Below, one piece after another: positions 32,862-60,476 of a DNA stretch of 64,000 nucleotides. Within the stretch, counting starts at the first letter, position 1. Each line of letters begins with the position of its first letter. The stretch is taken from positions 186,001 through 250,000 of IMG/VR virus record IMGVR_UViG_3300038463_000730; one strand, given 5' to 3'. A program made the translations under genes and the position numbers. Under the pieces are notes generated by a model. The model saw only the letters and a list, made by a program, of their open reading frames with translations. It did not search any database and was not told where the DNA came from.

Positions 32862-33905
32862 TTATTTCTCCTCTTTCAATACTTCAATGACTTTCGTTAG
32901 ATCGGATGGATACTGTACAGACAATTGTACTCGATGATTTCCATTCTTCGACCGGATACCACATCCCGGAACCACAATTTCATCCAAATGTTTCGACCGT
33001 GGCTTAACTTCTACTTCTTTATCCCCATAGACTGTCGGAACTTTTAACGTTCCACCTTGCAACATGTCCAGCAGCCCAATCCCGAGTTTAGATACGACAT
33101 CCACGCCTTCCAAATGCATATCCGGGTCCGGCGTTACACTGATCTGCATGACAGCATCCAAATACTGTGGCTTGTTGAACAACAAACAGAAGTTTCCCAT
33201 TCCCGGTAGCCGTAACGACACGCCGTTTGAAACTCCCGCTGGAATATTCACCTTACAAGTCCTCATAACCCCGAATGTACCGGTGCCATGACACGAATTG
33301 CACATAACTTTATCTTTCGTGATGCCGTAACATTTCGTGCAGATACGCGAATGCGAAACTTTACCGGTCGCCGTGACGCCCGAATCAATACGCCCCTTGC
33401 CACCGCACCCCCCACATGGCGGCTTATCAACTTGCGTTCCGCCTTTTCCAGCACATGCATTGCATGACTCCTGGCGCTCGTAACTTACAACACGATCCGT
33501 TCCACGGACCGACTCTGCAAACGAAACGGTCTGATTAATGATAATTTGCGGAACTTGATTTACAAACGGCTTTCCGAACGGAGAGTTCTGAAAATTGAAA
33601 AACTCATGGTTTGAGAAGAATTCCTTGAACAGATCGTTCATATCCTGTGCATTAGAAGGATCGACCTTACGAGTATATTGACCAGGAGGCTGATTCGTTC
33701 CACCGAATGGGGTTGGATGAGTCGGATGATAGTTTGTAAGATACGAGTGAGCAACATTGATCTGTTTGAACCGATCTTCTGCTCCCGGCTCTTTGTTGAT
33801 ATCAGGATGATACTTCTTAGTCAGCTCACGATACCGTTTCTTGATCTCATCTTCTGTAGCTGACGGATCAATACCCAGAATCTTGCATGCTTCTTGCCGG
33901 TTCAT
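32862..33905 (-). CDS. dnaJ: Chaperone DnaJ
   Basis: J-domain with HPD, four CxxCxG zinc repeats, C-terminal domain. Confidence 0.93.
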   Translation of the reverse strand: MNRQEACKILGIDPSATEDEIKKRYRELTKKYHPDINKEPGAEDRFKQINVAHSYLTNYHPTHPTPFGGTNQPPGQYTRKVDPSNAQDMNDLFKEFFSNHEFFNFQNSPFGKPFVNQVPQIIINQTVSFAESVRGTDRVVSYERQESCNACAGKGGTQVDKPPCGGCGGKGRIDSGVTATGKVSHSRICTKCYGITKDKVMCNSCHGTGTFGVMRTCKVNIPAGVSNGVSLRLPGMGNFCLLFNKPQYLDAVMQISVTPDPDMHLEGVDVVSKLGIGLLDMLQGGTLKVPTVYGDKEVEVKPRSKHLDEIVVPGCGIRSKNGNHRVQLSVQYPSDLTKVIEVLKEEK

Positions 33906-34474
33906 TTCTTCTTCTTAGCTTTCTTGACCTTCAAAATCGGTCTCGCTCCAAGATGATATGCCAGCGCAACCGCGATACCATCGGCAATATCGTAGCTTTC
34001 TACCATCACCTCATTGGTCTTGGTTCGCTTATTGAATTTGTACTGCCATGGGAAAGTAATCCCCAAGTGATGCTCGACGACAGACGGAATGTCTTCCTTT
34101 TTGGGGCGGTCTTTCCCAACTCGAATCTTAGAACGAATACTGTTCACATTCAACAGACTAGGTTCGACATGGCGATGATCACTACAAACCATTCCAACAA
34201 AACGATTGTAGATGGCTAGCTTAATGATCGTTTTGGCACCAGACTGACCCTGCATGAATTGTACGATATCTTCGATCGCAACTACATTGGGCTGATAACT
34301 ATCGAGTAATATCTGGATATCTGTTCGTACCTGACCGAGACTAGAGAAAATAGTCGTGTCCTTCGGAGGCTTAATATACCCGCATTTGACCAGCGTAGGT
34401 GGCGTAGTAACGGTATCGAGCACGCTCCACCCAATTGTCGTGCTAGAAACATCTAATCCAAGGATCGTGACCAT
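33902..34474 (-). CDS. ruvC: RuvC-like Holliday junction resolvase
   Basis: ILGLDVSSTTIGW, VAIED, DIADGIAVA; start moved to ATG 34474. Confidence 0.85.
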   Translation of the reverse strand: MVTILGLDVSSTTIGWSVLDTVTTPPTLVKCGYIKPPKDTTIFSSLGQVRTDIQILLDSYQPNVVAIEDIVQFMQGQSGAKTIIKLAIYNRFVGMVCSDHRHVEPSLLNVNSIRSKIRVGKDRPKKEDIPSVVEHHLGITFPWQYKFNKRTKTNEVMVESYDIADGIAVALAYHLGARPILKVKKAKKKK

Positions 34475-34489
34475 ACATAGCAATATATC

Positions 34490-34523
34490 AAAGAAAAAGC
34501 CCCGGAATTGCTTCCGGGGCTTT
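34490..34523 (-). terminator. Rho-independent terminator after the SSB gene
   Basis: GCCCCGGAA-GCAA-TTCCGGGGC followed by TTTTTCTTT on the minus strand. Confidence 0.88.
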
Positions 34524-34544
34524 ATCATTTCCTATCAGGCTTGA

Positions 34545-35261
34545 TTAGGTCGTTGCCGGGAACTTCGGAAACTCCAAGTCCGGATCGTCCTCTTCGTCAG
34601 CCACGTTGCTCTGAACCGCGCGAGACGCTGCCGGAGCCGCTGTCCGCGTTGCCGCTACAGGTGCAGGTGCATTCGGGCGCGCAGGAGTTCCGTTGAGGAT
34701 CTTATCCAAACGGTCCTGGACCTTCTCAGGGGTCGGAGGAACGCAACGCTTACGAAGGTCATCCGTATCGATCGTGTCACGGATCTGAACATCGTTAGCG
34801 CTCAGCGGTTTCGGAAGCTTCGGAGTCACGTGGTAGTAGTTCGTCGCTCCACCGTTCGGATCAACTTGGATGTTGATATCGTACTTGATCGGCTCGCCCC
34901 ACTCGTCGTCTTTCGTCAATTCCTGAATCGCCTTGAACACCGCGATTCCGACGTCGAGAATCTTGTACGACTGAGTCTTACGATCAATCGCGCCCAAGAG
35001 CCAACGACGCTTCGGCTTGTCACCGAGATCACACAACGGACAGGTAAAGCCCGGTCCCTTGCCCGCACACATCACACGCTGCCCAAACCCCGGATCACCC
35101 TCTTTCTTGTAACGGTGAACCGTGTACTGGTTCGGGGCTGTCACGATGCGAACAATGTTCGGCCCCTTATCCAATCGAAGGAACGTGTCCTTGTTATTGT
35201 CACGACTCGGCATAATGTCGGTCTGAACTTCACCCCAAGCTACTTCGCCATATTTCTGCAT
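34545..35261 (-). CDS. Single-stranded DNA-binding protein (gp32-like)
   Basis: FLRL..G.NIVRIV, H..C..CPLC zinc site, GEPIKYDI, acidic C-tail DEEDDPDLEF; start ATG 35261 behind GGAG. Confidence 0.75.
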   Translation of the reverse strand: MQKYGEVAWGEVQTDIMPSRDNNKDTFLRLDKGPNIVRIVTAPNQYTVHRYKKEGDPGFGQRVMCAGKGPGFTCPLCDLGDKPKRRWLLGAIDRKTQSYKILDVGIAVFKAIQELTKDDEWGEPIKYDINIQVDPNGGATNYYHVTPKLPKPLSANDVQIRDTIDTDDLRKRCVPPTPEKVQDRLDKILNGTPARPNAPAPVAATRTAAPAASRAVQSNVADEEDDPDLEFPKFPATT

Positions 35262-35391
35262 TTCAATCTCCAAATGATCATATTAGATCGTTGCTGTTTT
35301 GTTTCTATTGATTGTTAAGATAAGTGTCTTACTATTCTTGCGATACAGGTCTTACTTCTTGACTAAGCTGCGATAAAAACTCATATATGTC

Positions 35392-35763
35392 TTAGCGACC
35401 GAACTCGACAAAGCGCTTCCGGTTGTGATCATTTGTCCGCCCGAAGCGGACCTTGACTCCCGCCTTCTTCAAGTCGGGAAGCAAACGATCAACCGTTGCA
35501 CGCATTGCACGAGGGTTACTCGGCCACGAAACGTTCTGACGACGCACAACCTTGCGAAGCGAGGCCTCAAGCTCCGTCATCGAGCCTGTCCATGTGCTGG
35601 CCTTGTTACGAAGGAGACGAGCCACGCCCGACACGAACACTGAATCAAGATTCGTCTTCGTTGCCGTTGTTGCTGTCTTCGTCGCTGGCGTCTTCGTTGC
35701 CACGACCACACGTGCTGTTGCACGCTTCGCTGTCTTTCTTGGTGCTGCTGTAAATGTTGCCAT
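35392..35763 (-). CDS. Basic winged-helix-like DNA-binding protein
   Basis: K/R/T-rich N-terminus; WTGSMTEL..WP.NPRAM..L..L...L...GV pattern. Confidence 0.5.
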   Translation of the reverse strand: MATFTAAPRKTAKRATARVVVATKTPATKTATTATKTNLDSVFVSGVARLLRNKASTWTGSMTELEASLRKVVRRQNVSWPSNPRAMRATVDRLLPDLKKAGVKVRFGRTNDHNRKRFVEFGR

Positions 35764-35771
35764 TTTCTTCC

Positions 35772-36083
35772 TTATTTCTTGAATGTTAACGTTTTGATTT
35801 CATGAGAACGATGCCATGGTACACAAATCTCTTGTAACTGAGACCGGACGATCATTGACTGATAATCCGTGGTAGTTTTCAATATATCAGGCTCTTTGAT
35901 TTCTACACCAATGAACTCCAGATGCGTTGCAAACTTATCAACCTTGTTACAAACGAAGTAAGCCAGGGTCTTTGTTTTCAATCCTCTCTCGAAAGTAATC
36001 AGATAGACAGGCAACTGTTTAGTTGGCTTTACATCTGATAAATCCCCGTGAAAGGACGGGATGAACATGTCTTTTTCTGCCAT
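35772..36083 (-). CDS. Hypothetical protein
   Basis: AGGA RBS and upstream promoter-like motif. Confidence 0.55.
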   Translation of the reverse strand: MAEKDMFIPSFHGDLSDVKPTKQLPVYLITFERGLKTKTLAYFVCNKVDKFATHLEFIGVEIKEPDILKTTTDYQSMIVRSQLQEICVPWHRSHEIKTLTFKK

Positions 36084-36121
36084 GATGTTCCTACTATTTA
36101 TATATCAGGACGATGTATAAT

Positions 36122-37120
36122 TTACTCTTCGTCGGACGAATTTTCGTCGTCCCAGCCCTTGATATCATCGAAAGATTTCGCGTCCTTCGCAAGCAGGATT
36201 CCGTCCGACGAAACAACGATGTCCATCTCTGAGATGCACTCGTCACCATCGAACATGTGGTTTTTCTTCACCACCGCTCTTGAGACGATTCCGTATTTGT
36301 ATTTCTCACCACCACGAGTGCGGGTAAGATTTCCTTTACGGCTCAATTGAACAATCAAGCTGCTCAGATAGAAAAGCTCGCCACCGCCCTTTTCCGTCTG
36401 ACCAGGAGAACCGATGTTCGCATAGACCTGATTGATAACCAGTGTCGCGACCTGCTCTTCGCCAGTCTCACGATCCATATGCTTGTCCATAAGCTTTACA
36501 AACTTACGAACTGCGAAAGACACTTCCTTCGCCGTGACACCGGGCTGCTTCGACATATTCTCAGTATCTTCATTATCTTCTGAAGAGTTTACCGAGGCTC
36601 CAACAGAATCCCAAACGACAAGAACTTTTTTGTCTGGATAAGATTCGCGGCAAGCATCGACAAGCTTTGCAACGGCAATCGCGCCATCCTCAATCTTTGT
36701 CGTCCGAATACAAAGCAAACTTTCCGGATCTCCACCGATCTTAGCAAATCGGTTGGGAGAGAATTTCTTCTCGCTATCCCAAAGGACAACTAAACATCCT
36801 TGATCCTGTGCTTCCTTCATGAAGACCGCAGCATGCGTGCTCTTCCCTGAATCGGGCTTTCCCGAAATCTGAACAATACGCCCGAACGCAATACCGCGCG
36901 TATGTGTCAACGTTTCCCAATGCGGGCCTTTGGTCCATAAAACGAAATCGGAATCCTTCGACGGATTCTTAATCGAAGAACCTGAGCTTAGCTGCTGAGC
37001 TACTCCGTTCTCTTTCTTACCGTAAGAACCCTGTGCTTTCTTAAGCAGCTTATCAATATCGATTGCAGGTTTCTTTGTGACCTTTGGCGTAACTTTTGCT
37101 ACTACTGGTGCTTCTGGCAT
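36122..37120 (-). CDS. recA: RecA/UvsX recombinase
   Basis: GIAFGRIVQISGKPDSGKST, DSEKK, VVWDSVG, INQVY..IG, GG..L. Confidence 0.9.
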   Translation of the reverse strand: MPEAPVVAKVTPKVTKKPAIDIDKLLKKAQGSYGKKENGVAQQLSSGSSIKNPSKDSDFVLWTKGPHWETLTHTRGIAFGRIVQISGKPDSGKSTHAAVFMKEAQDQGCLVVLWDSEKKFSPNRFAKIGGDPESLLCIRTTKIEDGAIAVAKLVDACRESYPDKKVLVVWDSVGASVNSSEDNEDTENMSKQPGVTAKEVSFAVRKFVKLMDKHMDRETGEEQVATLVINQVYANIGSPGQTEKGGGELFYLSSLIVQLSRKGNLTRTRGGEKYKYGIVSRAVVKKNHMFDGDECISEMDIVVSSDGILLAKDAKSFDDIKGWDDENSSDEE

Positions 37121-41700: not shown

Positions 41701-42272
41701 TGATCGATCGAATCGTTGTAGTTAGATGCAAACCTACGCAGATTGTTCGGTTGGATTTCTAGCCCAAAATTGTCTCCAAAAATCCCCACCAACTTTTTGA
41801 TCGTTTCCTCGGCCTCGACGAACTTCTTGTTGTTCAACAATTGCGCCACGATCCCGCCTCCACAAGCGGTCAGGCAGATTACTCCATCGGAGTGCTGCTC
41901 CATCAGCTTCCAGTCGATGATCGGATAGACACGCTTTCCGTACGTGCTAACTCCGTGATCGAACCCGGCACGGTTCAGGAGGAGGAGATTCCTATAACCA
42001 ACCGAATTCTTAGCAAGGAGAATGACATGACGAATCTTGTCTTCGGACTTTGACGCATCGTTGACAAAATAATACTCACACCCCACGATAAACTTGACGC
42101 CCACCTCTTTAGCAGCCTTGGCGGCATCCCAAACCGCAGAGAAAGTACCATGGTCCGTAATGGCAAGTGCCGGTTGGCCGAGTTCTTTCGCACGAGTAAA
42201 CAACTCCTTCGGAGTGGGCATGGCGTCAAGCATCGAGAAGTTTGAGTGATTGTGAAGCGAGACGTATTTCAT
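38742..42272 (-). CDS. dnaE: DNA polymerase III alpha subunit, no intein
   Basis: SLHNHSNFSMLD (PHP), GPGRGSVGGS, PDIDSDF, KMDFLGL, YGFNLSH. Confidence 0.97.
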   Translation of the reverse strand: MKYVSLHNHSNFSMLDAMPTPKELFTRAKELGQPALAITDHGTFSAVWDAAKAAKEVGVKFIVGCEYYFVNDASKSEDKIRHVILLAKNSVGYRNLLLLNRAGFDHGVSTYGKRVYPIIDWKLMEQHSDGVICLTACGGGIVAQLLNNKKFVEAEETIKKLVGIFGDNFGLEIQPNNLRRFASNYNDSIDQDFTNAHTIRLAKKHGVRIVPTSNAHYLHKEDADTHDAMLAIGAGQPQYSNARLKYEISDLYLHSADDILAFFNRKYEGEVEGWIDNTVHFANLCEEPVWIDPKYSNPSGKELPIFPVQDQADFQEFQAWVARPQNDSVRSLEQDKLYMRYLCEKDAYKRMPNDSRRAEYEARLKEEIDVIEYHGFSSYMLIVADFIEWARKNNILTGPGRGSVGGSLIGYLLDIHRADPIQYKLIFARFHNKEKSSFPDIDSDFAPYGRNRVLDYVRNKYGDDKVAHVSNLNTITPKVYAKDITRACELAGSRQASVKLGEDIANSIPSPKDVKTFDKAIEKSGLFAAYVQKYPKIKKYSAICGNYRAWATHAAGIVISQRPLAGLVPLRRDKEGTIALEYDKDRAEENGLVKMDFLGLETLDIIKETFDLAAKAGKSLPPTQIDVPLDDQATYDLLSRGDTFCVFQLGTSSGTIDLCKKIKPQSIEDISAINSLARPSARDIREDYVKTKDGRLPFKLLDPSLQRAFGGTFGFGLYEECLMYLAQDVAGWTLHEADRLRKLTKEKGKNPKKAAKWRQDFIDDAKKNKNIDPKVSTQIWDEVVDKFQGYGFNLSHSILYSMTSYYTAYLKAHYPLEFLLANLKSEIRSKSKPAKNNIEKIKTEIRRQRIVIMPPDINHSDISYTIKDAKTIVTGLNAMAFVGKDAIQEIVDKRPFRNFFDFMVRCEKKKLNSKSIKVLAATGCLDSFGLKRRQIYLYCEDYRKKLDSWLKKNNPAVSEMNYPWPDEPEWSLSERYALEKLWAGEGFSCGKKDAFVPFFDDKGSIRVKTLKSMNDKERIPSMKAEIKSIFVFKVKKEGSKYLGRDMAKLTIEDVYGDQMSLTMFPEGLDLVNERIKLFSGGKQKLEEGICIHFNGTINIYEDDTGAVLENIFSYAPPPALPADFKEKKKVNLRQPKGPKEEKELDKTATQEEITNDIESELFDAGLIEFDEDPQDN

Positions 42273-42874
42273 CGACGATCCTTTTTTATCCTGATCAAAT
42301 CTTCCAGATGCCGGAACATTTTCTTCCAGAAACGAACTTGGTGTTTTGAACCTAAGATAGCCTGTTTTATTCCATGGTAATCAAGCTGTTTGAATTGAGC
42401 AATAGATTTGGCTACCGCACTAATTACTACCCAATGTTCTTTAACCAATTGGTCTGTTTCACGATCAAGACGCTTGCGTAGACGCAAGCGAGCGTCTGAC
42501 TTAGCGTAGCGCTTACGTACTATCGCTCGATACGCTTCGAAATCATTCTTCGCTGTCAGCCTTAGCGACCGCGGAACCTTTTCTCCCACCAGCGTCTCGA
42601 AAAACCTCTTCTCGCTCGCATGGCCCGCGAGAAACATTCGCAAACGGCCATGTAACAAGAATAACTCAGGGCCCCGAGGTTTGAGACCCGAAGAGGGAAA
42701 CGTGGGAACAGAAGTAACTGTTTCACCGGCTATGTATCCTTTTCCAAAGATCGACACCTTCAACGGATGAATCAAAGCAAGAATTGACAGGACGACATGC
42801 CCGGCCTCGTGGTGCGAGGACATCAATGCTTCTGAGTCGTTACGATCAAACCAATCACACTTTGGTAGCCTCAT
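42269..42874 (-). CDS. Stand-alone peptidase M41 (FtsH-like) domain protein
   Basis: HHEAGHVV, LAGHASE, NDF, HW..I.AVA. Confidence 0.7.
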   Translation of the reverse strand: MRLPKCDWFDRNDSEALMSSHHEAGHVVLSILALIHPLKVSIFGKGYIAGETVTSVPTFPSSGLKPRGPELFLLHGRLRMFLAGHASEKRFFETLVGEKVPRSLRLTAKNDFEAYRAIVRKRYAKSDARLRLRKRLDRETDQLVKEHWVVISAVAKSIAQFKQLDYHGIKQAILGSKHQVRFWKKMFRHLEDLIRIKKDRR

Positions 42875-43151
42875 ACAACTGAGTGAGAACGGCTTCGAAG
42901 CCGGTCGTCATGTCTTCACACTTAGGTGTTTTACACTTCAGATCAAACGTTGCGCTACCGAATTTGCCAGAGACGATTATGTTATTGTTTTCGGCGTAAA
43001 ACATTCCTACTTTGTAGTACGGTCTCGAAACAGAAAAACCCGCGCCCTCGAATTGTGTTATCGATTCTTTCTTGAGTGAGAAAGACAAACGATAAACGGT
43101 AGAGAAACTACCACAACAAGCCGGGACGCGGGTTTTCACAAAAGCATTCAC
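42855..43151 (-). CDS. Hypothetical Cys-containing protein
   Basis: GTG start directly after the upstream stop. Confidence 0.5.
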   Translation of the reverse strand: MNAFVKTRVPACCGSFSTVYRLSFSLKKESITQFEGAGFSVSRPYYKVGMFYAENNNIIVSGKFGSATFDLKCKTPKCEDMTTGFEAVLTQLYEATKV

Positions 43152-43402: not shown

Positions 43403-43557
43403 TGCACTCGTCTACCGCAGATTTTACAGGTGATTACCACCTCATTAAGTTTTCGAGGTGGGAAATCGGGTGGCCCGGTCCAGAACATATTCCAGACATG
43501 GCCACGTAATAGGCACCATACTTCTCGAAAGTAATTACTTCGAGATGTCCACACCAC
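43399..43557 (-). CDS. ~52-aa C-x3-GH-x-W...CxxC microprotein (DUF1660-like)
   Basis: ..EVWCLLRGHVWNMF...CKICGRRVQ; GTG start near 43554-43557. Confidence 0.6.
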   Translation of the reverse strand: MVWTSRSNYFREVWCLLRGHVWNMFWTGPPDFPPRKLNEVVITCKICGRRVQ

Positions 43558-43822
43558 GGCTCTCAAGAGCATAAAAGCAATAGGCAATCTTCGCCTTCTC
43601 AATCGCCGCGGATTCCTTGTACGGCAATCCCAATCCCTTCGCCTCTTCCACAGCCTTGGTCAGCGCCTCGTCTTCCTCCTTGGCTCTTTCGATCTCAACC
43701 AAATGCCCGTGAGATTGAAAGACCTTTTTCTTAATTTCCTCAGTATCCATTGAGTCAATCGACTCGCTCCAACCCTGAGGAAGAATCTTCTCTTTGCTTT
43801 TCGGAAACGCCTTATCACTCAT
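43535..43822 (-). CDS. Small coiled-coil hypothetical protein
   Basis: AAGGA RBS; overlaps the trigger-factor stop. Confidence 0.6.
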   Translation of the reverse strand: MSDKAFPKSKEKILPQGWSESIDSMDTEEIKKKVFQSHGHLVEIERAKEEDEALTKAVEEAKGLGLPYKESAAIEKAKIAYCFYALESRGVDISK

Positions 43823-45146
43823 GTGTATGTCCTTCGTGTCCTGTATGACCGTGGTCTTTGTGTTCGTGACTATGTTCGTGATTTATGTGGTCAACTAGTT
43901 TGCAAGTTGTCACCAACCAGTTGAGAACGCGCTCGTCGCGTATTCTTCCAAGCAATACCGGCAAGCTCCCACTCTTCTGGAGATCCTGGAACGCCTTCTC
44001 GACATCCCCACTCTTGCCGTTCCGGGCTTGCATTTGAGCCAAGTGAAACCGGACCAATTGAAAAGCCTCTTCATCCGAAAGCTGTGCCTCTGGCTCGACT
44101 TCACGGATCTTTTCCAGAACCAACGAAAGTTTGATGCTTTTCTTCGCTTCATTCAGGAACGATTCTTTTTCCTCGTCCGTGAGCTTGTCCCATTCTTTTT
44201 TCGCCATCTTTGATTTGATTTGAGCTTCAGATGACAACAACCAATCCGGAATGGGAATGTCGTGTCCCTCAACCAACCGATGGGACACCTGAACACTGAC
44301 CAGCGAATTTCGGTGCTCGTCAACGCGCGTCGTCGCTACTTGCGCGACGTGCGTACGTAGGTCGTCCAAGTCCTTCATGTTCAGGCGTTTGGCCAACTCG
44401 TCATCCAAGGCGGCTGGAGTCGTTCGCGAGCCCATACAGACCTCGGCCTTGAAGTGGATCGTTTTCCCTTTGAATTCCTCCGAAACATTCGGAGGTGTGA
44501 CGTAATCAAATTCGCGTACGTCACCCATCTTCATTCCAAGAAGATTGTCGTCGAATCCCGGTAGTGGAGATTTTCCGACGTGAACAACCTCTTTCTTTGC
44601 GGTCAGATCCTTGCGAGCAACTCCATCAATCGTTCCTTCGTAATCCAGGAGAATCGAGTCCCCGACCTGAACGAAATCATCATCTGTAAAAGGAACCGAA
44701 TCACCATTCCGCTCGCGCAAATCCTGCAAGATTTTCTCGCTGAATTGGCTAATTGAAATCGGCTCGGCCGGGCGGGGAATTTCGAAATCGCGATACTTAT
44801 TCAATACGACGGTTGGTTTGACTCGCATTGTGAATTCACAAGTGAATTTGGAATCCGTCAGATTCAACATCGAAAACTCCGGCATCCCGAGAGCTTTCAT
44901 GTTGCGATCATTTAGAACACCAATAAACGCTTCCTCAGCCAATACCTCGCGAAGTCGATTTTCGATCTGCTTCTTGTATCGAATCTTAATAGCGTCAAGC
45001 GACGCTTTCCCAGGACGAAAGCCAGGGACGTTAACGCCTTTAAATTCAGCCAGTACCTCAGTTCGCTTAGAGACAATCTTCTCAAGATCAGCCTCGGCAT
45101 GAACCGAAACTTTGCAGTACTCCACTTCATTGACAGCGAATTCCAT
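43815..45146 (-). CDS. tig: Trigger factor with His-rich C-terminal tail
   Basis: VPGFRPGKA ribosome-binding signature; FKBP domain (GD..LDYEG.IDG..LPGFDDNLLGMK.G); LDDELAK; start ATG 45146 behind GAGG. Confidence 0.92.
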   Translation of the reverse strand: MEFAVNEVEYCKVSVHAEADLEKIVSKRTEVLAEFKGVNVPGFRPGKASLDAIKIRYKKQIENRLREVLAEEAFIGVLNDRNMKALGMPEFSMLNLTDSKFTCEFTMRVKPTVVLNKYRDFEIPRPAEPISISQFSEKILQDLRERNGDSVPFTDDDFVQVGDSILLDYEGTIDGVARKDLTAKKEVVHVGKSPLPGFDDNLLGMKMGDVREFDYVTPPNVSEEFKGKTIHFKAEVCMGSRTTPAALDDELAKRLNMKDLDDLRTHVAQVATTRVDEHRNSLVSVQVSHRLVEGHDIPIPDWLLSSEAQIKSKMAKKEWDKLTDEEKESFLNEAKKSIKLSLVLEKIREVEPEAQLSDEEAFQLVRFHLAQMQARNGKSGDVEKAFQDLQKSGSLPVLLGRIRDERVLNWLVTTCKLVDHINHEHSHEHKDHGHTGHEGHTHE

Positions 45147-48441: not shown

Positions 48442-48996
48442 CTATTTCTTGTGCTGCTTAATTACGTGTCGATAATAGCTTTCCTTAGTTGGGCCAAGGA
48501 TGAAAGGAAAAGTTGCGGAAAGTCGATCGTCGCCCCAGTCTCCAGCCCAAAGTGTCGCCTCATGCGCCGCCCATTCGATCGGATGCTCGAACGTAATACA
48601 GTCGATCTGATCTTCTGCATAAGACAGCGTAATATGCGGTTTGAAATCTGGATAACGCTTATCATAGTGAATGCCGCACTTATCGAACCCGGCCGTAATA
48701 CACTGTTGAAACTCTAGCAACTCGGGCGAATTGACCCGAGCGATCACCGGCACGCCGATATCCGTGGCGGTCGGAAAACACTTCACCTTGCTTGTCTTTA
48801 GGGTAAACGGTGTTCTCTTGGAGGTTACCTTGTAGATAGCGGCTACAGCCTTCGCAATCTGCGTAATCGAGATGTTTTCACCAAGATAACACACAGTGAT
48901 ATGCATCTGATCAAGTGGAACAGGTGACCCTGGAACCGCGATCTGAGAAAGCAATCGAGCTGTTTCATGTGGGATTTTGATGCCTACAAAACTCAT
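48442..48996 (-). CDS. 2H phosphoesterase (LigT/ThpR; Acb1/T4 57B-like)
   Basis: Two HxT motifs: MHITVCYLG and YPDFKPHITLSY. Confidence 0.85.
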   Translation of the reverse strand: MSFVGIKIPHETARLLSQIAVPGSPVPLDQMHITVCYLGENISITQIAKAVAAIYKVTSKRTPFTLKTSKVKCFPTATDIGVPVIARVNSPELLEFQQCITAGFDKCGIHYDKRYPDFKPHITLSYAEDQIDCITFEHPIEWAAHEATLWAGDWGDDRLSATFPFILGPTKESYYRHVIKQHKK

Positions 48997-54288: not shown

Positions 54289-54290
54289 GA

Positions 54291-54770
54291 TTAGTACTTG
54301 ATCCGTGTTGGGTACGGAGCAGTCGTAGAAACCTTAACTTGAGGTTTTAGCGAAACCTCGATGTATCGTGTTCCACGCTGAACATCATACTTGCTCGAAA
54401 CAAGTGTTTCGAGCGCCGGTAAAAACGCCGGAACGGATGAATCAAGATACAACGTATCTCCACCCGCATCATATGCCTTACAATAAGTATGAACAGGCTT
54501 CGGTGTCAAAGCGAACAAGCTGAGTTGCAAGTCCTTAATCTCATTCCAGATCTGGGTTGAGAGAGGCTTCTCGGGAGCCTGTGGCATTGGTAGCGGCGCC
54601 TGAGCTGTCGCAACTGCGTGCGTGTGCGCGTGCGCTGACCCGGACATCTGCGACTCGATGAAATGCTTGTACTCTTTCTCATTCATCTTAAGTGGCGGAG
54701 CATTGCCCTCTAGAGTTGCCGGTGGTGTGATTTCTGATTCTTTACGTTTCGTCATTGTGGTTCCTTCCAT
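54291..54770 (-). CDS. Hypothetical protein
   Basis: Promoter-like motif upstream. Confidence 0.6.
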   Translation of the reverse strand: MEGTTMTKRKESEITPPATLEGNAPPLKMNEKEYKHFIESQMSGSAHAHTHAVATAQAPLPMPQAPEKPLSTQIWNEIKDLQLSLFALTPKPVHTYCKAYDAGGDTLYLDSSVPAFLPALETLVSSKYDVQRGTRYIEVSLKPQVKVSTTAPYPTRIKY

Positions 54771-55092
54771 TTTTCAATATATCATCGCCGTAGACTTCGC
54801 GCATGGCTGCTCGAAACGCCGATGTCAACATATGGCCTTCTAACTTCTTTACCATGTCTTTCCCTCGGAAAAGTAGGATTGTGGGGACTCTCGTAATATC
54901 GTTGACTTTACAAATACCCCTAAACGATTCGACATCGATAGCCAGCGCGGTGATTCCGTTTTCGGTAGAAACCTGCTCCACCATATTGCGGCTGTTAACA
55001 ACAATCCCCTTAGGGAGCCACGTGGCATAAAAATACAAAACATGGTCAGATGGCAACGATTTCAATTCAGTTTCGTTCAATATCGAATACAT
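54742..55092 (-). CDS. Thioredoxin-fold protein lacking CxxC
   Basis: VLYFYATW, IDVE, ITRVPTILLFRG; WLPKG in place of WCxxC. Confidence 0.7.
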   Translation of the reverse strand: MYSILNETELKSLPSDHVLYFYATWLPKGIVVNSRNMVEQVSTENGITALAIDVESFRGICKVNDITRVPTILLFRGKDMVKKLEGHMLTSAFRAAMREVYGDDILKNGRNHNDET

Positions 55093-55093
55093 G

Positions 55094-55429
55094 TTAGTTT
55101 GAGCTAGGGTCGTACTTTCGCTTCGGTGAAACAACGGTCGCGATCTCAGCGTCCTTGTTCTTCTCCGGGATCAAGTTCTCGGCGGCAACTTCCACCATGC
55201 CTTCGGCAATAGCCTTGATTGCAGCGAAAGCCGGATCATTCTTGAACATATCCATCACTGTGACCGTCACGTCTTCCATTTCCTTCTCAATCTCTTCGTC
55301 GGTCACGAGCCCCTTCTTCACAAGAAGAGCCTTAACTGCTCCGAGTCGAACGGAAAGTTCGATGATGAGAAGCTGCTGTTGAATCGTTGGATCGAGTTTC
55401 AATAGTTCCATGAGGCTAAGCTGTTTCAT
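55094..55429 (-). CDS. Hypothetical protein
   Basis: GGAG RBS; LLVKKGLVTDEEI helix motif. Confidence 0.55.
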   Translation of the reverse strand: MKQLSLMELLKLDPTIQQQLLIIELSVRLGAVKALLVKKGLVTDEEIEKEMEDVTVTVMDMFKNDPAFAAIKAIAEGMVEVAAENLIPEKNKDAEIATVVSPKRKYDPSSN

Positions 55430-55437: not shown

Positions 55438-55950
55438 CTATTTTCCACAACACTTCTTGAATTTCTTATCAGAACCGCAAACACATTTCTCGTTTGGCCC
55501 AACCTTCAACTTCTTCGGTATCGCTTTATCGAAGAAGAGCGTTTGAGTCACATGATCTAGTTCATGTTGGCAAACCACTGCCAACATTCCGGTTGCAACA
55601 AACCTTTTTGGATGAAGTAGATTACCAGCCACGACAATCTCTTGAAACCGCGTTGTCGTTTCAATGCGTCCAGGAAAAGAAAGACATCCCTCATTATGAA
55701 AGGGTCTGGGATCATAGCCATGCTCTAATCGCGCGTTCACCAAATCGAATTTAAACTCGTGGTCCAACCGAACTATCGCCATCTTTTTAGCGATGCCAAT
55801 TTGTGGCGCAGCCAAACCGACTCCAGAGCGACCAAGCCTTTCGCAGCGAGCCAACTCCAACTCCAGTGCTTCTCGGAGCGGAGCAATTTCGTCACTCGTG
55901 ACGTCTTCACATTTTACCCGCAACGCTGCTTCGTCGTTCGTAATAAGCAT
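55438..55950 (-). CDS. def: Peptide deformylase fused to a C-terminal SEC-C motif
   Basis: GVGLAAPQIG, EGCLS, QHELDH; GPNEKCVCGSDKKFKKCCG; start ATG 55950. Confidence 0.93.
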   Translation of the reverse strand: MLITNDEAALRVKCEDVTSDEIAPLREALELELARCERLGRSGVGLAAPQIGIAKKMAIVRLDHEFKFDLVNARLEHGYDPRPFHNEGCLSFPGRIETTTRFQEIVVAGNLLHPKRFVATGMLAVVCQHELDHVTQTLFFDKAIPKKLKVGPNEKCVCGSDKKFKKCCGK

Positions 55951-56437: not shown

Positions 56438-56516
56438 TTTCTTTTTCTCCTTGGACGATAACCGATAAAGATTATCGTGTATTATATAGCATGACATTTA
56501 GTAACGTGAACAAGAA

Positions 56517-57020
56517 TCAACCGAGATAGAAACGCCAATCATTGTGCCAGATTTTATTATCGATTCTCTGCATCGTACCGAGACTTGGAATGAACGGTTG
56601 ACTTCTTAAAATCATCCCGGTTTGTTCTAGTGTACGTGAACCCTTACGACGATTGCACTTCGAACATGAAGCAACACAATTCATGAAACTGCTTGGACCA
56701 CCGAGCGAACGCGGGATGATATGATCGATAGTCATGTTCTCTCCGTACAACTCACACCCACAGTATTGACACAGGTACTCATCCCGCTTCAACACCGCTC
56801 TACGACTGAAACCCAAAGGCTTATGGGGTGGTTTCCTAACCAGATAACGAAGGCGCAGCACAGAAGGATAGTTAATCTTCTTCTTGAGATAAACGAAGTA
56901 ATCATCCCATACATGCAGAGGATCCGCTTTGTCCTTCAATAGGAGGCGGATTGCTTTACGTTCGGTGACGAAACAAAGCACTTCATAGTTATGGTTTAGG
57001 AGGAGGGCTTGGTGATGCAT
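56517..57020 (-). CDS. HNH endonuclease (McrA-like)
   Basis: LLLN.NYE, R.AVLKRD..CQYCG, TIDHIIPRSLGG, N.VASC.KCN.RKG. Confidence 0.9.
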   Translation of the reverse strand: MHHQALLLNHNYEVLCFVTERKAIRLLLKDKADPLHVWDDYFVYLKKKINYPSVLRLRYLVRKPPHKPLGFSRRAVLKRDEYLCQYCGCELYGENMTIDHIIPRSLGGPSSFMNCVASCSKCNRRKGSRTLEQTGMILRSQPFIPSLGTMQRIDNKIWHNDWRFYLG

Positions 57021-57690
57021 TTGGAATTTGAATAAGCTTATCTATCGATTGTCTTATATCCTCACCGTTACAGATTTCGTTTCCAACAACAACCCAACCA
57101 TTTCGCTTCCGACGACCGAACAACTCCAACTTGTCACACCCTGGAAACATTGTGTCTAGATAATCCTGGACCAATTCTGGTTTCGTAGAGTGTCCACGAT
57201 TTTCGTCAAAACATACAGAACGTTGCGATCGACTCTTTAGCTTCTTGTATATTTTAGTACTGTTAACGCCAATCAAACAGATCTCGTGTGATTGTCGAAA
57301 CAACCGTCCCATTCCGAAGGACATGGTCCCGTTCTGATCGAATAAATCGATCTCGGCTTCGATCGCCGGTCTGGTCATCGGATTGAGCTTGCGAATGCTC
57401 TTCTTCAAATTCTGTAAAGGCTCTTTCTTTGTCTTGACCCAGACAAATGTTTGTTTCTGCTGGAAACCCCAGTCCTTCATTATCTGGAGGCCTTCCGAAA
57501 GCATCGAGCCCAAAACCCACAAAACAAGTACGGTGCCATTAGGATCTGAAATATCTTTGACTCGTAATAGAGACAGATCAGAAATCGATAGAGTAGAGTA
57601 GTTACTCGCCGCACCACGCTTCACCTTGCTCATCTTAAGTTTATCTTCAGGTCCCCACGGACAATCGGCAACTATGACCTGGAATTTCAT
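56989..57690 (-). CDS. MT-A70-family N6-adenine methyltransferase (DCPW variant)
   Basis: VIVADCPW, L.LWV, WGF..K..FVWVK, GMG..FR..HE, HSTKP, LELFGR, GW..VGNE. Confidence 0.88.
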   Translation of the reverse strand: MKFQVIVADCPWGPEDKLKMSKVKRGAASNYSTLSISDLSLLRVKDISDPNGTVLVLWVLGSMLSEGLQIMKDWGFQQKQTFVWVKTKKEPLQNLKKSIRKLNPMTRPAIEAEIDLFDQNGTMSFGMGRLFRQSHEICLIGVNSTKIYKKLKSRSQRSVCFDENRGHSTKPELVQDYLDTMFPGCDKLELFGRRKRNGWVVVGNEICNGEDIRQSIDKLIQIPNASPSPPPKP

Positions 57691-58205
57691 GGCTGATTCC
57701 TAACAAGCGCTTCAGCAATCTGATACATTGTATCGTCGCTATTTCGCCCTCTAAATGTGTTGATTTGATTCAACACAAATCTAATATTGTCTTTTGTATA
57801 TCCTCCACTATGAACGATACGATCCACGCTTATCGAATTCCATGGTGTGTAACTTTTTTCAACCTTCTTAATTCTAACCATAGGTAGATTGGTTAGCTCA
57901 CACTTCCACTCTATCTCATTCAATCTGGATAGAACCCAGTCACGATCTAAATCAAAAGGCAAGCCCTGTTGTTTACATAGACTTTTTTTATGTCGAACAA
58001 TCTCCGCCGCAATACCAACATCCGTCATGCGATACTCGTCCACATCATCCTTCTCACACTTTCGACATGTATTGTTTATGTATTTTCCTTTACCGCGGCC
58101 TGACTTTTTCTCTCTTACACGAAACAGTCCGACGTCTAACATTTCTCTGCATTCAAAGCATATTTTCTTCGAATGATCTTTTGAATATGAATCATAATTA
58201 GCCAT
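57687..58205 (-). mobile_element. Putative homing/HNH-like endonuclease
   Basis: CxxC..CxxC N-terminus; C.LT.LP..S.DRI....GYTKDN.RFV...N. Confidence 0.7.
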
Positions 58206-58237
58206 ACCGGCAATATATCAACGGTGGCCAGGGCGGA

Positions 58238-58579
58238 TCACGAACCTTCCGATTTCTTGTTTATCTCTTCCAGTTGAAGTATAACACCATCAATCTGTCT
58301 TAGCTTAAGAAAACGGATATTCTGTTCTTCAGTATCCTTTAGTTTCCGATACTCACGCCGTAGTTTACCGAGTCTCTTGAAGTCTGAGATCTTGAAACGT
58401 TTATCAGATCCCATATCAGGAATAGATGTCACCCATCCTTCCGTCACAAATGGATTGGGTATAGCTTGGATTTCGGCATCAATCTCGCGAAGCCTATGAC
58501 GAACTTTTATATGGCTCGAAAGAACGTTTGATAGTTCTTCATCAGCTGACACATCCGATGGTTCGATGTATCCATCCAT
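58238..58579 (-). CDS. Hypothetical protein
   Basis: Translationally coupled ORF. Confidence 0.5.
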   Translation of the reverse strand: MDGYIEPSDVSADEELSNVLSSHIKVRHRLREIDAEIQAIPNPFVTEGWVTSIPDMGSDKRFKISDFKRLGKLRREYRKLKDTEEQNIRFLKLRQIDGVILQLEEINKKSEGS

Positions 58580-59355
58580 CAGATTAGCTTTGCAGCCTCT
58601 AGTTCGATCGGTGCTTCCGACTCATTGATCTCGAAAGAGTTCGAATACTTGATCCGTGGCCTACCGGCATTCTCTCGCTTCATGATGTTGACCTGGTAAC
58701 GACCAGGCGGAAGCGGTGCTTGCCATTTACCAGCAGCGGTAGTTCGGGTCTTCGTTATAACCGAGCCATCTTCAGCGCGCAGAATCTCGACGTCCGCCAT
58801 GAAGATCATCTTCTTCCCTGTTTCATCGAAGACTCGTTGAAAAACAGGCGTGACCTTCTTCTGTAACGGATTCGGTTCGTGGTATGTCTCTGGCCGAGCC
58901 GTTCGACGTATTCCAACGGGACTCGTCTCAACCGACATAGAGAAGCCTGGGTCATCCTGAGCGACTAGAACCGAAGGATTCTCAACCTCAATCTGCGGCC
59001 GAAAAGATGGGAAATCATCCTCCGGATCGGCATTACTCCCCATCGTCGCAGGGTAAACACTCTGCCGTTGTGATTGAACCGGACCGGGTAGTTCACGCGC
59101 ATTGGCTTCCGTTAGCTTGACAAGCTTCTCCAACGAACCAGCAATCTTATTCAAACGATCCAACGTCAACTTACTGTTGATATCGTTGCTATAGATCATT
59201 CGAGTAAGTAGATCAACTTTCCCCTCAAGGTCAATAACCACAGAAGAGACAGTACGACTAGATTTACTGTCTGCGGATTCCTTGGCATCTGAAGTTTTGT
59301 TGAGATCCAAAAGATCATCAATACCAGTATTTGCAGTAGAACTTTTCTCAGACAC
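58579..59355 (-). CDS. Hypothetical protein with a C-terminal prealbumin/carboxypeptidase-regulatory-like beta domain
   Basis: A.VEI....G......T.A.G.W...LPPG.Y.V. Confidence 0.55.
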   Translation of the reverse strand: MSEKSSTANTGIDDLLDLNKTSDAKESADSKSSRTVSSVVIDLEGKVDLLTRMIYSNDINSKLTLDRLNKIAGSLEKLVKLTEANARELPGPVQSQRQSVYPATMGSNADPEDDFPSFRPQIEVENPSVLVAQDDPGFSMSVETSPVGIRRTARPETYHEPNPLQKKVTPVFQRVFDETGKKMIFMADVEILRAEDGSVITKTRTTAAGKWQAPLPPGRYQVNIMKRENAGRPRIKYSNSFEINESEAPIELEAAKLI

Positions 59356-59374
59356 TCAATCTCCCGTCGCTACG

Positions 59375-60061
59375 TTATTCAATCGATACGCCAACTCGGA
59401 TTCTCATCCTCATCAATACAACAAAATCATCCGGGTCTAACGACATACCCTTAAAATCAGGATGGCGATCATAGATGATATCCGATACTATCTCGTTCAT
59501 TAGGCCCAAATCACCACGAGCAACGATCTTACCTTTGATCATGAGAAGATAGCCACCAGGAGCGACAAAATCGTGATTCGGCTCTGATACGGAAGTATCT
59601 TGAGCTTCCGTAAAAGATTGAACATCTTCACCGTCATAGTTCTCTGTTTCAAATTCTTTTCTGGAATCTTTGTAATTCTGAACAGGTACATCATATTGAT
59701 CTGCATTTATCATCACATCATCATCTTCCGAAACAGGAACGCCGTTCATTGTCCAGAGATGTTCCTCGCCGCCTGTACTGTACGGAACCTGCGCTTGCGG
59801 TGGCGCAAGCGGCTGCTGCAAATTGTTCGGCCAACCACGATTATCACGAATACGCTGAGTTGCTCCGACTCGCGCCTGTTCCTGAGGATTCTCACGTCCA
59901 GGCGGAATGTGAACTACTCGGTGCTGAGTGACAGACTGGGGTTCCACGACCCGTCCCGACCGATCCATAAGAATCGGCTGTTTGTTCCATCGTACGTATT
60001 CTGGTACGTATGGTTTTTGTTTTGGTAACGGTCTTCGTGGAACCCTATTCTGTTGATCCAT
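59375..60061 (-). CDS. Hypothetical protein
   Basis: AAGGA RBS. Confidence 0.55.
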   Translation of the reverse strand: MDQQNRVPRRPLPKQKPYVPEYVRWNKQPILMDRSGRVVEPQSVTQHRVVHIPPGRENPQEQARVGATQRIRDNRGWPNNLQQPLAPPQAQVPYSTGGEEHLWTMNGVPVSEDDDVMINADQYDVPVQNYKDSRKEFETENYDGEDVQSFTEAQDTSVSEPNHDFVAPGGYLLMIKGKIVARGDLGLMNEIVSDIIYDRHPDFKGMSLDPDDFVVLMRMRIRVGVSIE

Positions 60062-60062
60062 A

Positions 60063-60476
60063 TTATCCTTCTAAGTCATCCATATGCGCCATTGGCTCGA
60101 TGTCATACTTTCGATCTTTCTTCGACTCTTTGACATCACCGTTGGCATAACGAACCTTCTTCATCTCCAGTTCGAAAAGTTTACGACGCATTTCATTCCG
60201 CTTCCTACGCAACTTATCAGATCGTTTTTCAAACGACTGTTTCTCCTTGTAGAGAGCCAGGATCCTTTCCTTTTGAACCTGAGCACGGAAAGCCTTAAAT
60301 GCCTTGTCAAAATTGTTGTACACTTTGACTTCAAGCGGGATCGCCTGAACTGCATCAGTAGGATATGTCGCTCCAGTAGGAACGACGCTGCGGGACGAAT
60401 TCGCAATAAACTTTTCACCTCCCTTCGAATAGTTGGTGTTCTTTCTTGATACGTATCCGTTATTCTTGTTGCTCAT
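60063..60476 (-). CDS. rpsU: Ribosomal protein bS21 homolog with N- and C-terminal extensions
   Basis: V.V.NNFDKAFKAF...V.KE.IL..YK....FEK.SDK.RRKR. Confidence 0.85.
   Translation of the reverse strand: MSNKNNGYVSRKNTNYSKGGEKFIANSSRSVVPTGATYPTDAVQAIPLEVKVYNNFDKAFKAFRAQVQKERILALYKEKQSFEKRSDKLRRKRNEMRRKLFELEMKKVRYANGDVKESKKDRKYDIEPMAHMDDLEG

What the first reader, a model, noticed from the sequence alone, without database searches (positions are those of the whole stretch)
32862..60476. Phage-encoded ribosome-associated pipeline: bS21, deformylase, trigger factor, DnaJ
Seen: rpsU (with unusual N- and C-terminal extensions), def, tig (intact GFRxGK signature) and full-length dnaJ within ~28 kb. 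Known: PDF and trigger factor act at the exit tunnel and bS21 at initiation; bS21 and PDF are known in large phages, trigger factor much less often as far as I know. Inference: the phage refits host ribosomes from initiation through nascent-chain folding.
Basis: partly seen in the sequence, partly recalled or inferred. Interest (0 to 1): 0.66.

Follow-up and report, generated by a model that had tools for sequence, protein, structure and literature searches.

The report
Huge-phage protein-biogenesis gene set
A very large bacteriophage carries its own ribosomal protein bS21, a peptide deformylase with a SecA-type zinc tail, trigger factor and DnaJ; all four sit at fixed positions across a whole clade of huge phages, which suggests these viruses manage how their proteins are made and folded on host ribosomes.

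Summary
All four genes are real, intact and on the minus strand: DnaJ 32862-33905, trigger factor (TF) 43815-45146, peptide deformylase (PDF) 55438-55950 and bS21 60063-60476. The window is part of a 434,688-bp IMG/VR phage contig and also holds terminase, portal and prohead protease genes. The genes are not recent pickups. In more than 100 related huge-phage contigs, relatives of the 'Judaphage' clade of Al-Shayeb 2020, they keep the same places in a fixed gene order. Phage TFs separate from the seven bacterial TFs sampled (SH-aLRT 100).

The PDF lacks the usual C-terminal helix and ends in a SecA-like metal-binding (SEC-C) motif, conserved clade-wide; none of 120 sampled cellular proteins with that motif is a PDF. 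The same region also holds a conserved AAA+ ATPase and a stand-alone FtsH-type protease domain.

bS21 with N-terminal extensions, and PDF, were already reported in huge phages. TF and DnaJ carry automated labels in deposited files, but no paper found discusses them.

The four genes are not an operon; they are scattered through the replication module. Ribosome binding is inferred, not shown. The "ribosome refit" reading is plausible but only partly supported.

The parts
60063..60476 (-). Ribosomal protein bS21 homologue, 137 aa. The S21 core is residues 50-101 (about 60174-60329). It has a basic N-terminal extension and a C-terminal tail.
   Evidence: Pfam PF01165 42.5 bits (cut-off 27). NCBIfam S21p 36.5 bits (cut-off 28.95). 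Found in 47 of 61 clade loci anchored on PDF, always with an N-terminal extension.
55438..55950 (-). Peptide deformylase, 170 aa, fused to a C-terminal SecA-type metal-binding (SEC-C) motif at residues about 148-170 (DNA 55441-55509).
   Evidence: Pfam PF01327 82 bits plus PF02810 27.1 bits. Three catalytic motifs present. AF2 pLDDT 93.3; TM 0.73 to E. coli PDF over about 150 columns. The fusion is conserved clade-wide.
43815..45146 (-). Trigger factor, 443 aa: N domain with GFRPGK, FKBP-like domain and C domain. This phage alone adds a His-rich tail of about 24 aa.
   Evidence: AF2 pLDDT 84.3. Foldseek gives full-length matches to E. coli TF: 1w26 (E 4e-22) and ribosome-bound 2vrh (E 7.7e-22, TM 0.63/0.65).
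32862..33905 (-). Type I DnaJ-like co-chaperone, 347 aa: J domain with HPD, four Cys repeats and a C-terminal domain.
   Evidence: Present after ruvC in all 49 clade loci anchored on RecA. HPD is invariant in 40 distinct sequences.
33902..34474 (-). RuvC-like resolvase, first gene of the ruvC-dnaJ-Zn-ribbon operon. Its stop overlaps the dnaJ start by 4 nt.
   Evidence: Pfam RuvC. Corrected start is the ATG at 34474. The overlap is also seen in relatives.
34482..34523 (-). Terminator hairpin (34496-34523), followed by an extended -10-like TGATATATT that ends 7 nt before the ruvC ATG.
   Evidence: The same layout occurs upstream of ruvC in at least 11 of 24 distinct relatives.
42269..42874 (-). 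Stand-alone FtsH-type (M41) metalloprotease domain, 201 aa, with HEAGH. It lies three genes downstream of TF.
   Evidence: Homologues in 56 loci, most with HE[AS]GH. A profile of 18 sequences hits only FtsH-type proteases (FtsH and AFG3L2) in the PDB, best E 5.3e-6.
43535..43822 (-). Conserved 95-aa ORF of unknown function whose start overlaps the TF stop.
   Evidence: tblastn hits in 53 loci directly after TF. No Pfam family.
60529..61860 (-). Classic-clade AAA+ ATPase, 443 aa, with a single AAA domain of the Cdc48/PAN/FtsH/YjoB type. It lies directly upstream of bS21.
   Evidence: Pfam AAA 74.3 bits. PDB and NCBIfam matches. Conserved next to bS21, 41-59% identity at that position.
54742..55134 (-). 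Thioredoxin-fold protein without the CxxC active site, downstream of PDF.
   Evidence: Pfam Thioredoxin 28.4 bits. It has WLPKG where thioredoxin has WCGPC. Conserved after PDF in most relatives.

Best explanation
The window is the replication and early region of a huge phage, on a 435-kb contig, related to the 'Judaphage' clade. This clade has long carried, and inherits vertically, its own set of protein-biogenesis factors. These most likely work on host ribosomes during a long infection.

Proposed roles:
- bS21. It is a late-binding, exchangeable 30S protein. The phage version, with its basic extensions, would replace or top up host bS21 and bias initiation.
- PDF. It removes the formyl group from nascent chains. 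It has lost the C-terminal helix that tethers E. coli PDF to the ribosome. It carries instead a SecA-type zinc-binding motif, which in SecA binds 70S ribosomes near uL23.
- TF. It docks at the tunnel exit through its GFRxGK loop and shields nascent chains.
- DnaJ. Through its invariant HPD motif it hands clients to DnaK, probably the host's. No DnaK is annotated in the stored parts of the related deposited genomes.
- The AAA+ ATPase and the FtsH-type protease domain would add quality control.

Shown here: gene identity, intact motifs, predicted folds, clade-wide synteny, and the separate grouping of phage TFs.

Inferred: ribosome binding, the role of the zinc motif, the use of host DnaK, and any benefit to the phage.
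For: - Identity and intactness.
- Folds: TF model against 1w26 and 2vrh, PDF model against E. coli PDF.
- Phage context.
- Fixed gene order in relatives: Topo, AAA+, bS21, MT-A70, HNH, PDF, Trx, DnaG-Zn, SbcD, SbcC, dNMP kinase, CHB_HEX, PD-(D/E)XK, TF, M41, DnaE, RecA, RuvC, DnaJ.
- Counts: PDF in 37 of 40 TF loci with a full flank. bS21 in 47 of 61 loci. DnaJ in 49 of 49 loci, with HPD invariant.
- Size and depth of the families: 727 TF clusters at 90% identity, and about 150 TF clusters at 50% identity with E below 1e-30. 1061 PDF clusters, of which 118 of the top 120 carry PF01327 plus PF02810.
- Tree: 128 phage-type TFs against 7 bacterial TFs, SH-aLRT 100.
- No phage-type TF was found in 185,579 species genomes by a pattern scan.
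- The SecA C-terminal tail with its metal-binding domain co-sediments with 70S ribosomes and cross-links to uL23 (PMC6620043).
Against: - There are no expression, binding or activity data.
- The genes are scattered in a DNA replication and recombination module, not grouped, and they use different start signals.
- dnaJ is translationally coupled to ruvC and lies next to the primase gene. That would also fit a role in replisome remodelling.
- PDF is missing in at least one lineage that keeps bS21, TF and DnaJ (L054/L160), so the set is not obligatorily complete.
- DnaJ and PDF score below the NCBIfam equivalog cut-offs.
- The TF signature ends in S rather than P in this phage.
- The host is unknown.
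- The bacterial sample in the TF tree is small: 7 sequences.
Confidence: 0.6

Rival explanations
1. The chaperones serve particular phage assemblies, not ribosomes in general. DnaJ with host DnaK would remodel the phage replisome or initiation complex, as in lambda and P1 replication. TF would act off the ribosome as an assembly chaperone for large virion or replication complexes. bS21 and PDF would be unrelated add-ons.
For: - dnaJ overlaps the ruvC stop codon and is followed by a Zn-ribbon gene and a Toprim primase.
- TF lies between a PD-(D/E)XK nuclease gene and dnaE.
- TF is known to bind folded assembly intermediates off the ribosome; the PDB entries 3gty and 3gu0 appear among the fold matches.
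Against: - The TF ribosome-binding signature GFRxGK is kept across most of a family that has diverged to 26% identity. That is hard to explain if docking did not matter.
- The whole region is simply the phage's early and replication block, so gene neighbourhood is weak evidence.
- The co-conservation with bS21, PDF, AAA+ and the M41 domain points to protein biogenesis.
Confidence: 0.2
2. This is plain dosage compensation. After host shut-off, a long infection runs short of unstable or limiting host factors, and the phage copies merely replace them. There is no change in ribosome specificity and no special docking role for the zinc motif.
For: - This is the explanation offered for cyanophage PDF and for huge-phage elongation factors (PMC7162821).
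- All four proteins keep the canonical motifs of their host counterparts.
Against: - The phage versions are far from any bacterial copy (TF at most about 28% identical).
- They carry clade-specific changes that are conserved: the bS21 extensions and the replacement of the PDF C-terminal helix by a SEC-C motif. That argues for adaptation rather than simple replacement.
Confidence: 0.15
3. The genes are bacterial DNA: mis-assembly, mis-binning, or a recent horizontal pickup in this one genome.
For: TF hits in the curated phage collection are mostly unverified, unannotated records that look like bacterial contamination.
Against: - Terminase, portal and protease genes lie in the same window, on the same strand, with even GC content.
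- The same synteny is seen in more than 100 independent contigs of up to 480 kb from many samples.
- No phage-type TF was found in cellular genomes.
Confidence: 0.01

Closest known systems
Translation-related genes of huge phages (Al-Shayeb et al. 2020, PMC7162821), including the 'Judaphage' clade
   Same: - Same kind of genome. The relative SR-VP_PHAGE_40_16 (426 kb, listed as Judaphage) has DnaJ, TF and PDF annotated in the same order and spacing.
- The paper reports rpS21 with basic N-terminal extensions, and PDF.
   Different: - The paper's main text does not mention trigger factor, DnaJ or any chaperone.
- The PDF-SEC-C fusion, the clade-wide fixed synteny and the separate grouping of phage TFs are not described there.
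Phage peptide deformylases: cyanophage S-SSM7 (PDB 3uwa) and Vibrio phage Vp16 (PDB 5mtc)
   Same: A virus-encoded PDF with the three catalytic motifs. Both appear among the sequence matches.
   Different: Those enzymes are 154 and 137 residues long in the PDB. From my own knowledge they are minimal PDFs that simply lack a C-terminal domain. Here the C-terminus is a SecA-type CxC...CC zinc motif that is conserved across the clade.
Bacterial trigger factor (E. coli Tig; PDB 1w26, 2vrh)
   Same: Three-domain architecture, the GFRxGK loop, a full-length structural match, and a pass of the tig equivalog cut-off.
   Different: - About 21-25% identical to E. coli TF.
- Encoded by a virus.
- Shorter in the clade (about 415 aa).
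- The FKBP domain is weakly scored.
- It is followed by two small conserved ORFs and an FtsH-type protease domain rather than clpP-clpX.
Metal-binding domain of SecA (and of YecA and YchJ)
   Same: A motif of the form G-x-N-[DE]-x-C-x-C-G-S-G-K-K-[YF]-K-K-C-C at the extreme C-terminus. In SecA it binds SecB and 70S ribosomes and cross-links to uL23 (PMC6620043).
   Different: - Here it is attached to a PDF.
- The phage versions have GPN where the cellular ones have GRN.
- None of 120 sampled cellular carriers of the motif is a PDF.
Bacterial DnaJ and phage J-domain proteins (for example Rki of phage RB43; from my own knowledge, not checked here)
   Same: A J domain with HPD that should stimulate an Hsp70. 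There is a precedent for phages encoding J proteins that use host DnaK.
   Different: This one is a full-length type I DnaJ with a zinc finger and a client-binding C-terminal domain, not a bare J domain. It scores below the DnaJ equivalog cut-off (211.5 bits against 377.2), and its G/F region is poor.

Membership tests
Trigger factor (Tig) | N-terminal ribosome-binding domain with the GFRxGxxP signature | tested here: met
   Trigger_N 68 bits. GFRPGKAS at residues 42-49; the last position is S in this phage and P or S in relatives.
Trigger factor (Tig) | Three-domain N-FKBP-C architecture and fold | tested here: met
   Pfam Trigger_N and Trigger_C pass. FKBP_C is weak, 19.3 bits against 21.1. 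The AF2 model matches 1w26 and 2vrh over 434 columns, TM 0.56-0.65. NCBIfam tig 202 bits against 180.2.
Trigger factor (Tig) | Binds the 50S subunit at uL23 and chaperones nascent chains | not testable with these tools
   No binding data. Inferred from the conserved loop only.
Peptide deformylase | Catalytic motifs GxGxAAxQ, EGCLS and HExxH, and the PDF fold | tested here: met
   GVGLAAPQ, EGCLS and QHELDH are invariant or nearly so in 21 sequences. Model pLDDT 93.3, TM 0.73/0.76 to E. coli PDF. Pfam 82 bits against 22.8.
Peptide deformylase | Score above the NCBIfam equivalog cut-off | tested here: not met
   TIGR00079 79.9 bits against 103.95. It is a divergent member.
Peptide deformylase, type 1B (E. 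coli-like) | C-terminal alpha-helix that tethers the enzyme to the ribosome | tested here: not met
   The alignment with E. coli PDF ends near residue 147. Residues 148-170 are a linker plus the SEC-C motif, and the model has no C-terminal helix.
SecA-type metal-binding domain (SEC-C motif) | The CxCx8C[CH] motif with flanking basic residues | tested here: met
   PF02810 27.1 bits against 20.4. The four Cys are invariant in 21 sequences.
SecA-type metal-binding domain (SEC-C motif) | Binds zinc or iron, and binds SecB or the ribosome | tested here: inconclusive
   Complex prediction of the tail with E. coli uL23 and Zn gave no verdict, score 0.02. Metal binding cannot be tested here.
Ribosomal protein bS21 | S21 domain above the curated cut-offs | tested here: met
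   Pfam 42.5 bits against 27. NCBIfam 36.5 bits against 28.95.
Ribosomal protein bS21 | Small size (bacterial bS21 is about 55-75 aa, from my own knowledge), with little beyond the S21 core | tested here: not met
   137 aa here and 85-150 aa in relatives, with N- and C-terminal extensions.
DnaJ, type I | J domain with the HPD motif | tested here: met
   PF00226 64.6 bits. HPD is invariant in 40 distinct clade sequences.
DnaJ, type I | Four CxxCxGxG zinc-finger repeats and the C-terminal client-binding domain | tested here: met
   Three canonical repeats and one degenerate repeat. DnaJ_C 75.4 bits. The repeats are lost in about 6 of 40 divergent relatives.
DnaJ, type I | Gly/Phe-rich linker, and a score above the DnaJ_bact equivalog cut-off | tested here: not met
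   The linker is short and only weakly G/F-rich. TIGR02349 211.5 bits against 377.2.
Judaphage clade of huge phages | Grouping with named members on terminase or capsid trees | not tested
   Only indirect evidence: shared synteny and a TF homologue with SR-VP_PHAGE_40_16, which the paper lists as Judaphage. No terminase tree was built.

The most novel reading that the evidence does not exclude
The SecA-type zinc motif is a portable docking module for the ribosomal tunnel exit near uL23. This phage clade has grafted it onto its deformylase in place of the usual C-terminal helix. Together with a phage TF that docks at the same uL23 site, the phage would then occupy the exit port of host ribosomes with its own factors. 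That could also displace host SecA and TF, and so change the fate of host and phage nascent chains.
Probability: 0.25. Interest if true: 0.8.

Novelty: new variant of a known kind. Interest (0 to 1): 0.62.

Why it matters
Virus-encoded translation parts are known, but mostly on the tRNA, initiation and elongation side. Here a large and widespread clade of huge phages keeps, as core genes, the factors that meet a protein as it leaves the ribosome: deformylase, trigger factor, a DnaJ, and apparently an AAA+ ATPase with an FtsH-type protease domain.

- This would extend viral control of the host from making proteins to maturing and folding them.
- It gives a natural set of very divergent TF, PDF and DnaJ variants for testing what these factors need in order to work.
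- The PDF-SEC-C fusion is a natural experiment on an open question about SecA: what its metal-binding domain binds in species without SecB.

Tried and rejected
- Complex prediction of the PDF tail (residues 131-170) with E. coli uL23 and Zn gave no verdict, score 0.02. It is not evidence either way.
- Host identification failed. There are no tRNAs in the window. The genome scan with the TF alignment found nothing. The related published genomes are listed as host 'unknown', with Proteobacteria as the weak top phylum. The tools give no taxonomy for protein hits.
- TF hits in the curated phage collection were followed up. They are unverified or unannotated records with bacterial-type TFs and served only as a bacterial outgroup.
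- Generic sigma-70 promoter and terminator scans gave counts at chance level. Only the hairpin at 34496-34523 stood out.
- I considered that TF might be leaderless like PDF. I rejected this because TF has a GAGG Shine-Dalgarno site 8-11 nt upstream here, and in most relatives a site placed a little closer to the start.
- Pfam and NCBIfam found nothing for the small ORFs that follow TF, nor for several other ORFs.
- Literature searches for phage trigger factor and for PDF with SEC-C found no paper that discusses either.
- BFVD holds no TF-like viral structure at E of 0.001 or below.
- No DnaK is annotated in the stored parts of the related Judaphage GenBank files. Those files were cut when stored, and the rest of this genome could not be read.


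Full report
**1. What is there**

The window has about 47% GC, and nearly all its genes are on the minus strand. PHROGs identify a terminase large subunit (17785-19638), a portal (14255-16105) and a prohead-protease domain. Pfam identifies DnaE, RecA, RuvC, SbcC/SbcD, primase parts, topoisomerase, dNMP kinase, MT-A70 and homing-type nucleases. The trigger-factor gene is found with 100% identity on IMGVR_UViG_3300038463_000730, a 434,688-bp viral contig, and the same protein is recorded on a 502,994-bp contig. So this is a huge phage. Its terminase is only about 25% identical to anything in the curated phage collection.

**2. The four genes**

All four are confirmed.

- DnaJ (32862-33905) has a J domain with HPD, four Cys repeats and a DnaJ_C domain.
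- Trigger factor is 443 aa, from 43815 to 45146; the 472-aa ORF begins at an upstream GTG. It has GFRPGK at residues 42-47, passes the tig equivalog cut-off, and is about 21-25% identical to E. coli TF. An AlphaFold model (pLDDT 84.3) matches full-length E. coli TF over 434 columns, including the ribosome-bound form.
- PDF (55438-55950, 170 aa) has all three catalytic motifs. Its model (pLDDT 93.3) superposes on E. coli PDF at TM 0.73.
- bS21 (60063-60476) is 137 aa, with the S21 core at residues 50-101.

**3.

The PDF ends in a SEC-C motif. The alignment with E. coli PDF stops near residue 147, and the model has no C-terminal helix. Residues 148-170 are a short linker and a CxC...CC zinc-knuckle motif that closely resembles the metal-binding domain of SecA.

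- The four Cys are invariant in 21 aligned relatives.
- 118 of the best 120 database hits carry both Pfam domains, out of 1061 significant clusters.
Their carriers are SecA-sized proteins, YchJ-like proteins of about 170 aa and others. None has a PDF domain. This is a sample, not an exhaustive search.
- In E. coli, the SecA C-terminal tail with this domain co-sediments with 70S ribosomes and cross-links to uL23 (PMC6620043).

I therefore propose that the motif tethers the phage PDF at the tunnel exit. SecB or membrane binding are alternatives. A complex prediction with E. coli uL23 gave no verdict.

**4. Conservation**

Context look-ups for TF homologues of 42-58% identity showed the same neighbours each time. 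Three anchored scans of IMG/VR then gave 54 TF loci, 61 clade loci around PDF, and 49 clade loci around RecA.

The gene order is fixed: Topo, AAA+, bS21, MT-A70, HNH, PDF, Trx-like, DnaG-Zn, SbcD, SbcC, dNMP kinase, CHB_HEX, PD-(D/E)XK, TF, two small ORFs, M41 domain, DnaE, RecA, ORF, RuvC, DnaJ, Zn-ribbon, Toprim primase, sigma-like HTH.

- PDF is present in 37 of 40 TF loci with a full upstream flank. In two loci it lies just beyond the flank. In one lineage (L054) it is truly absent.
- bS21 is found in 47 of 61 loci. The rest have short flanks or expanded spacing.
- DnaJ is found in 49 of 49 loci, with HPD invariant in 40 distinct sequences. The zinc-finger repeats are lost only in the most divergent group.

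Identities to the window proteins are 34-76% for bS21, 41-68% for PDF, 27-58% for TF and 24-37% for DnaJ.

**5. Depth and origin of TF**

An exhaustive HMMER search gave 152 clusters (at 50% identity) with E below 1e-30, against 9113 with E below 1e-3. I built a tree of 128 of these phage-type sequences plus six bacterial TFs and one bacterial-looking hit. It splits phage-type from bacterial sequences with SH-aLRT 100. Members of all three phage subgroups lie in the same phage synteny. A pattern scan found no phage-type TF in cellular genomes, and BFVD holds no TF-like viral structure.

This fits one old acquisition followed by vertical descent. The caveat is that only seven bacterial sequences were available, so the donor lineage and the host stay unknown.

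**6. Relation to published work**

The relative SR-VP_PHAGE_40_16 (426 kb) is listed as 'Judaphage' in Al-Shayeb et al. 2020. Its deposited GenBank file annotates DnaJ, TF and PDF in the same order and spacing.

The paper's text discusses rpS21, including the basic N-terminal extensions, and PDF. It never mentions trigger factor, DnaJ or chaperones. No paper in the searchable library discusses phage TF or a PDF-SEC-C fusion. So the bS21 and PDF part is known. The TF and DnaJ part exists only as automated labels. The clade-wide conservation and the PDF fusion appear to be new.

**7. Organisation and expression signals**

The four genes are not an operon. They are spread over 27.6 kb among replication and recombination genes.

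- ruvC really starts at 34474. A strong hairpin (34496-34523) is followed by TGATATATT, whose hexamer ends 7 nt before the ATG.
- The ruvC stop overlaps the dnaJ start, and the dnaJ stop abuts the next ORF. So ruvC, dnaJ and the Zn-ribbon gene form one unit.
- The same extended -10-like motif ends 5-8 nt before the ATG of at least eight genes, including PDF and the terminase. There are 9 hexamers in that gap against 0.31 expected. This is the pattern typical of leaderless transcripts.
- The motif is conserved upstream of PDF in 20 of 56 relatives, and upstream of ruvC in at least 11 of 24.
- TF instead has a GAGG Shine-Dalgarno site, as in most relatives.

**8. Wider proteostasis content**

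- The ORF at 42269-42874 has HEAGH. Its homologues occur in 56 loci, and a profile of them hits only FtsH-type proteases (FtsH and AFG3L2) in the PDB.
- The gene upstream of bS21 is a single-domain classic AAA+ ATPase of the Cdc48/PAN/FtsH/YjoB type, conserved at that position.
- The thioredoxin-fold gene after PDF lacks the CxxC site.

**9. Verdict**

The mechanism that fits best is a phage-supplied set of ribosome-associated and downstream protein-biogenesis factors, with the PDF re-tethered through a SecA-type motif. Binding, activity, timing and host remain untested. A role of DnaJ or TF in replication or assembly is a live alternative.

Noticed in passing
window minus strand, upstream of the starts at 3216, 19638, 25898, 30571, 34474, 54770, 55950 and 58205: An extended -10-like motif [TC]G-N-TATAT[ATC] ends 5-8 nt before the ATG of at least eight genes, including terminase, ruvC and PDF. 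There are 9 hexamers against 0.31 expected. This suggests leaderless transcripts. The motif is conserved upstream of PDF and ruvC in many relatives.
   Followed up: partly
window 42269-42874 (-): A stand-alone FtsH-type (M41) protease domain with HEAGH, conserved in 56 related loci three genes after TF. A few lineages have lost the second His. With the separate AAA+ gene at 60529-61860, it might form a split FtsH-like system.
   Followed up: partly
window 60529-61860 (-): A classic-clade single-domain AAA+ ATPase (best PDB matches VCP-like ATPase, Cdc48 and B. subtilis YjoB), always directly upstream of bS21 in the clade. Its N-terminal 200 residues have no family hit.
   Followed up: partly
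window 43815-43889 (-), last 24 residues of TF: The TF of this phage alone ends in a His-rich tail (11 His in 24 residues), reminiscent of the metal-binding tail of SlyD. It is absent even from the 75%-identical relative P0002.
   Followed up: no
window 54742-55134 (-): A thioredoxin-fold protein conserved after PDF lacks the CxxC active site (WLPKG), so it is probably not redox-active. Its TTG start is doubtful.
   Followed up: no
window 43535-43822 and 42855-43151 (-): Two small ORFs (95 and 98 aa) follow TF in 50 or more related loci. The first overlaps the TF stop codon. Neither has a family match; they may be TF partners.
   Followed up: partly
window 48442-48996 (-): A 2H phosphoesterase with LigT and Acb1 (anti-CBASS) Pfam hits. 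It is present only in the closest relatives (L002, L003, L005, L008/L062) and absent elsewhere in the clade, so it is a variable counter-defence candidate.
   Followed up: no
window 56517-57020 (-) and 31915-32526 (-): The HNH endonuclease sits at a fixed position before PDF across the clade (37-48% identity), which is unlike a mobile homing gene. The GIY-YIG/NUMOD3 gene moves about or is absent in relatives, as expected of a mobile one.
   Followed up: no
L006 12655-17550; also L014, L037, L058 and L059: In some relatives dnaE is interrupted or split, for example into a 901-aa gene, a 299-aa gene and a 417-aa gene with the HHH_6 domain. An intein or an inserted gene is possible.
   Followed up: no
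L054 1-4200 (IMGVR_UViG_3300028735_000004): This divergent lineage keeps bS21, TF and DnaJ but has no PDF between the HNH and DnaG-Zn genes. So the set can lose members.
   Followed up: partly
window 21685-22530 (-): A PolyA_pol head-domain protein, a CCA-adding-enzyme-like nucleotidyltransferase. It is another RNA- or translation-related gene. There are no tRNA genes in the window.
   Followed up: no
'phages' collection hits H1-H24: Many records labelled as phage that carry TF are unverified or unannotated contigs with ordinary bacterial TFs. One Acinetobacter 'phage' contig of 220 kb has an annotated tig. These are probably bacterial contamination of the collection.
   Followed up: partly
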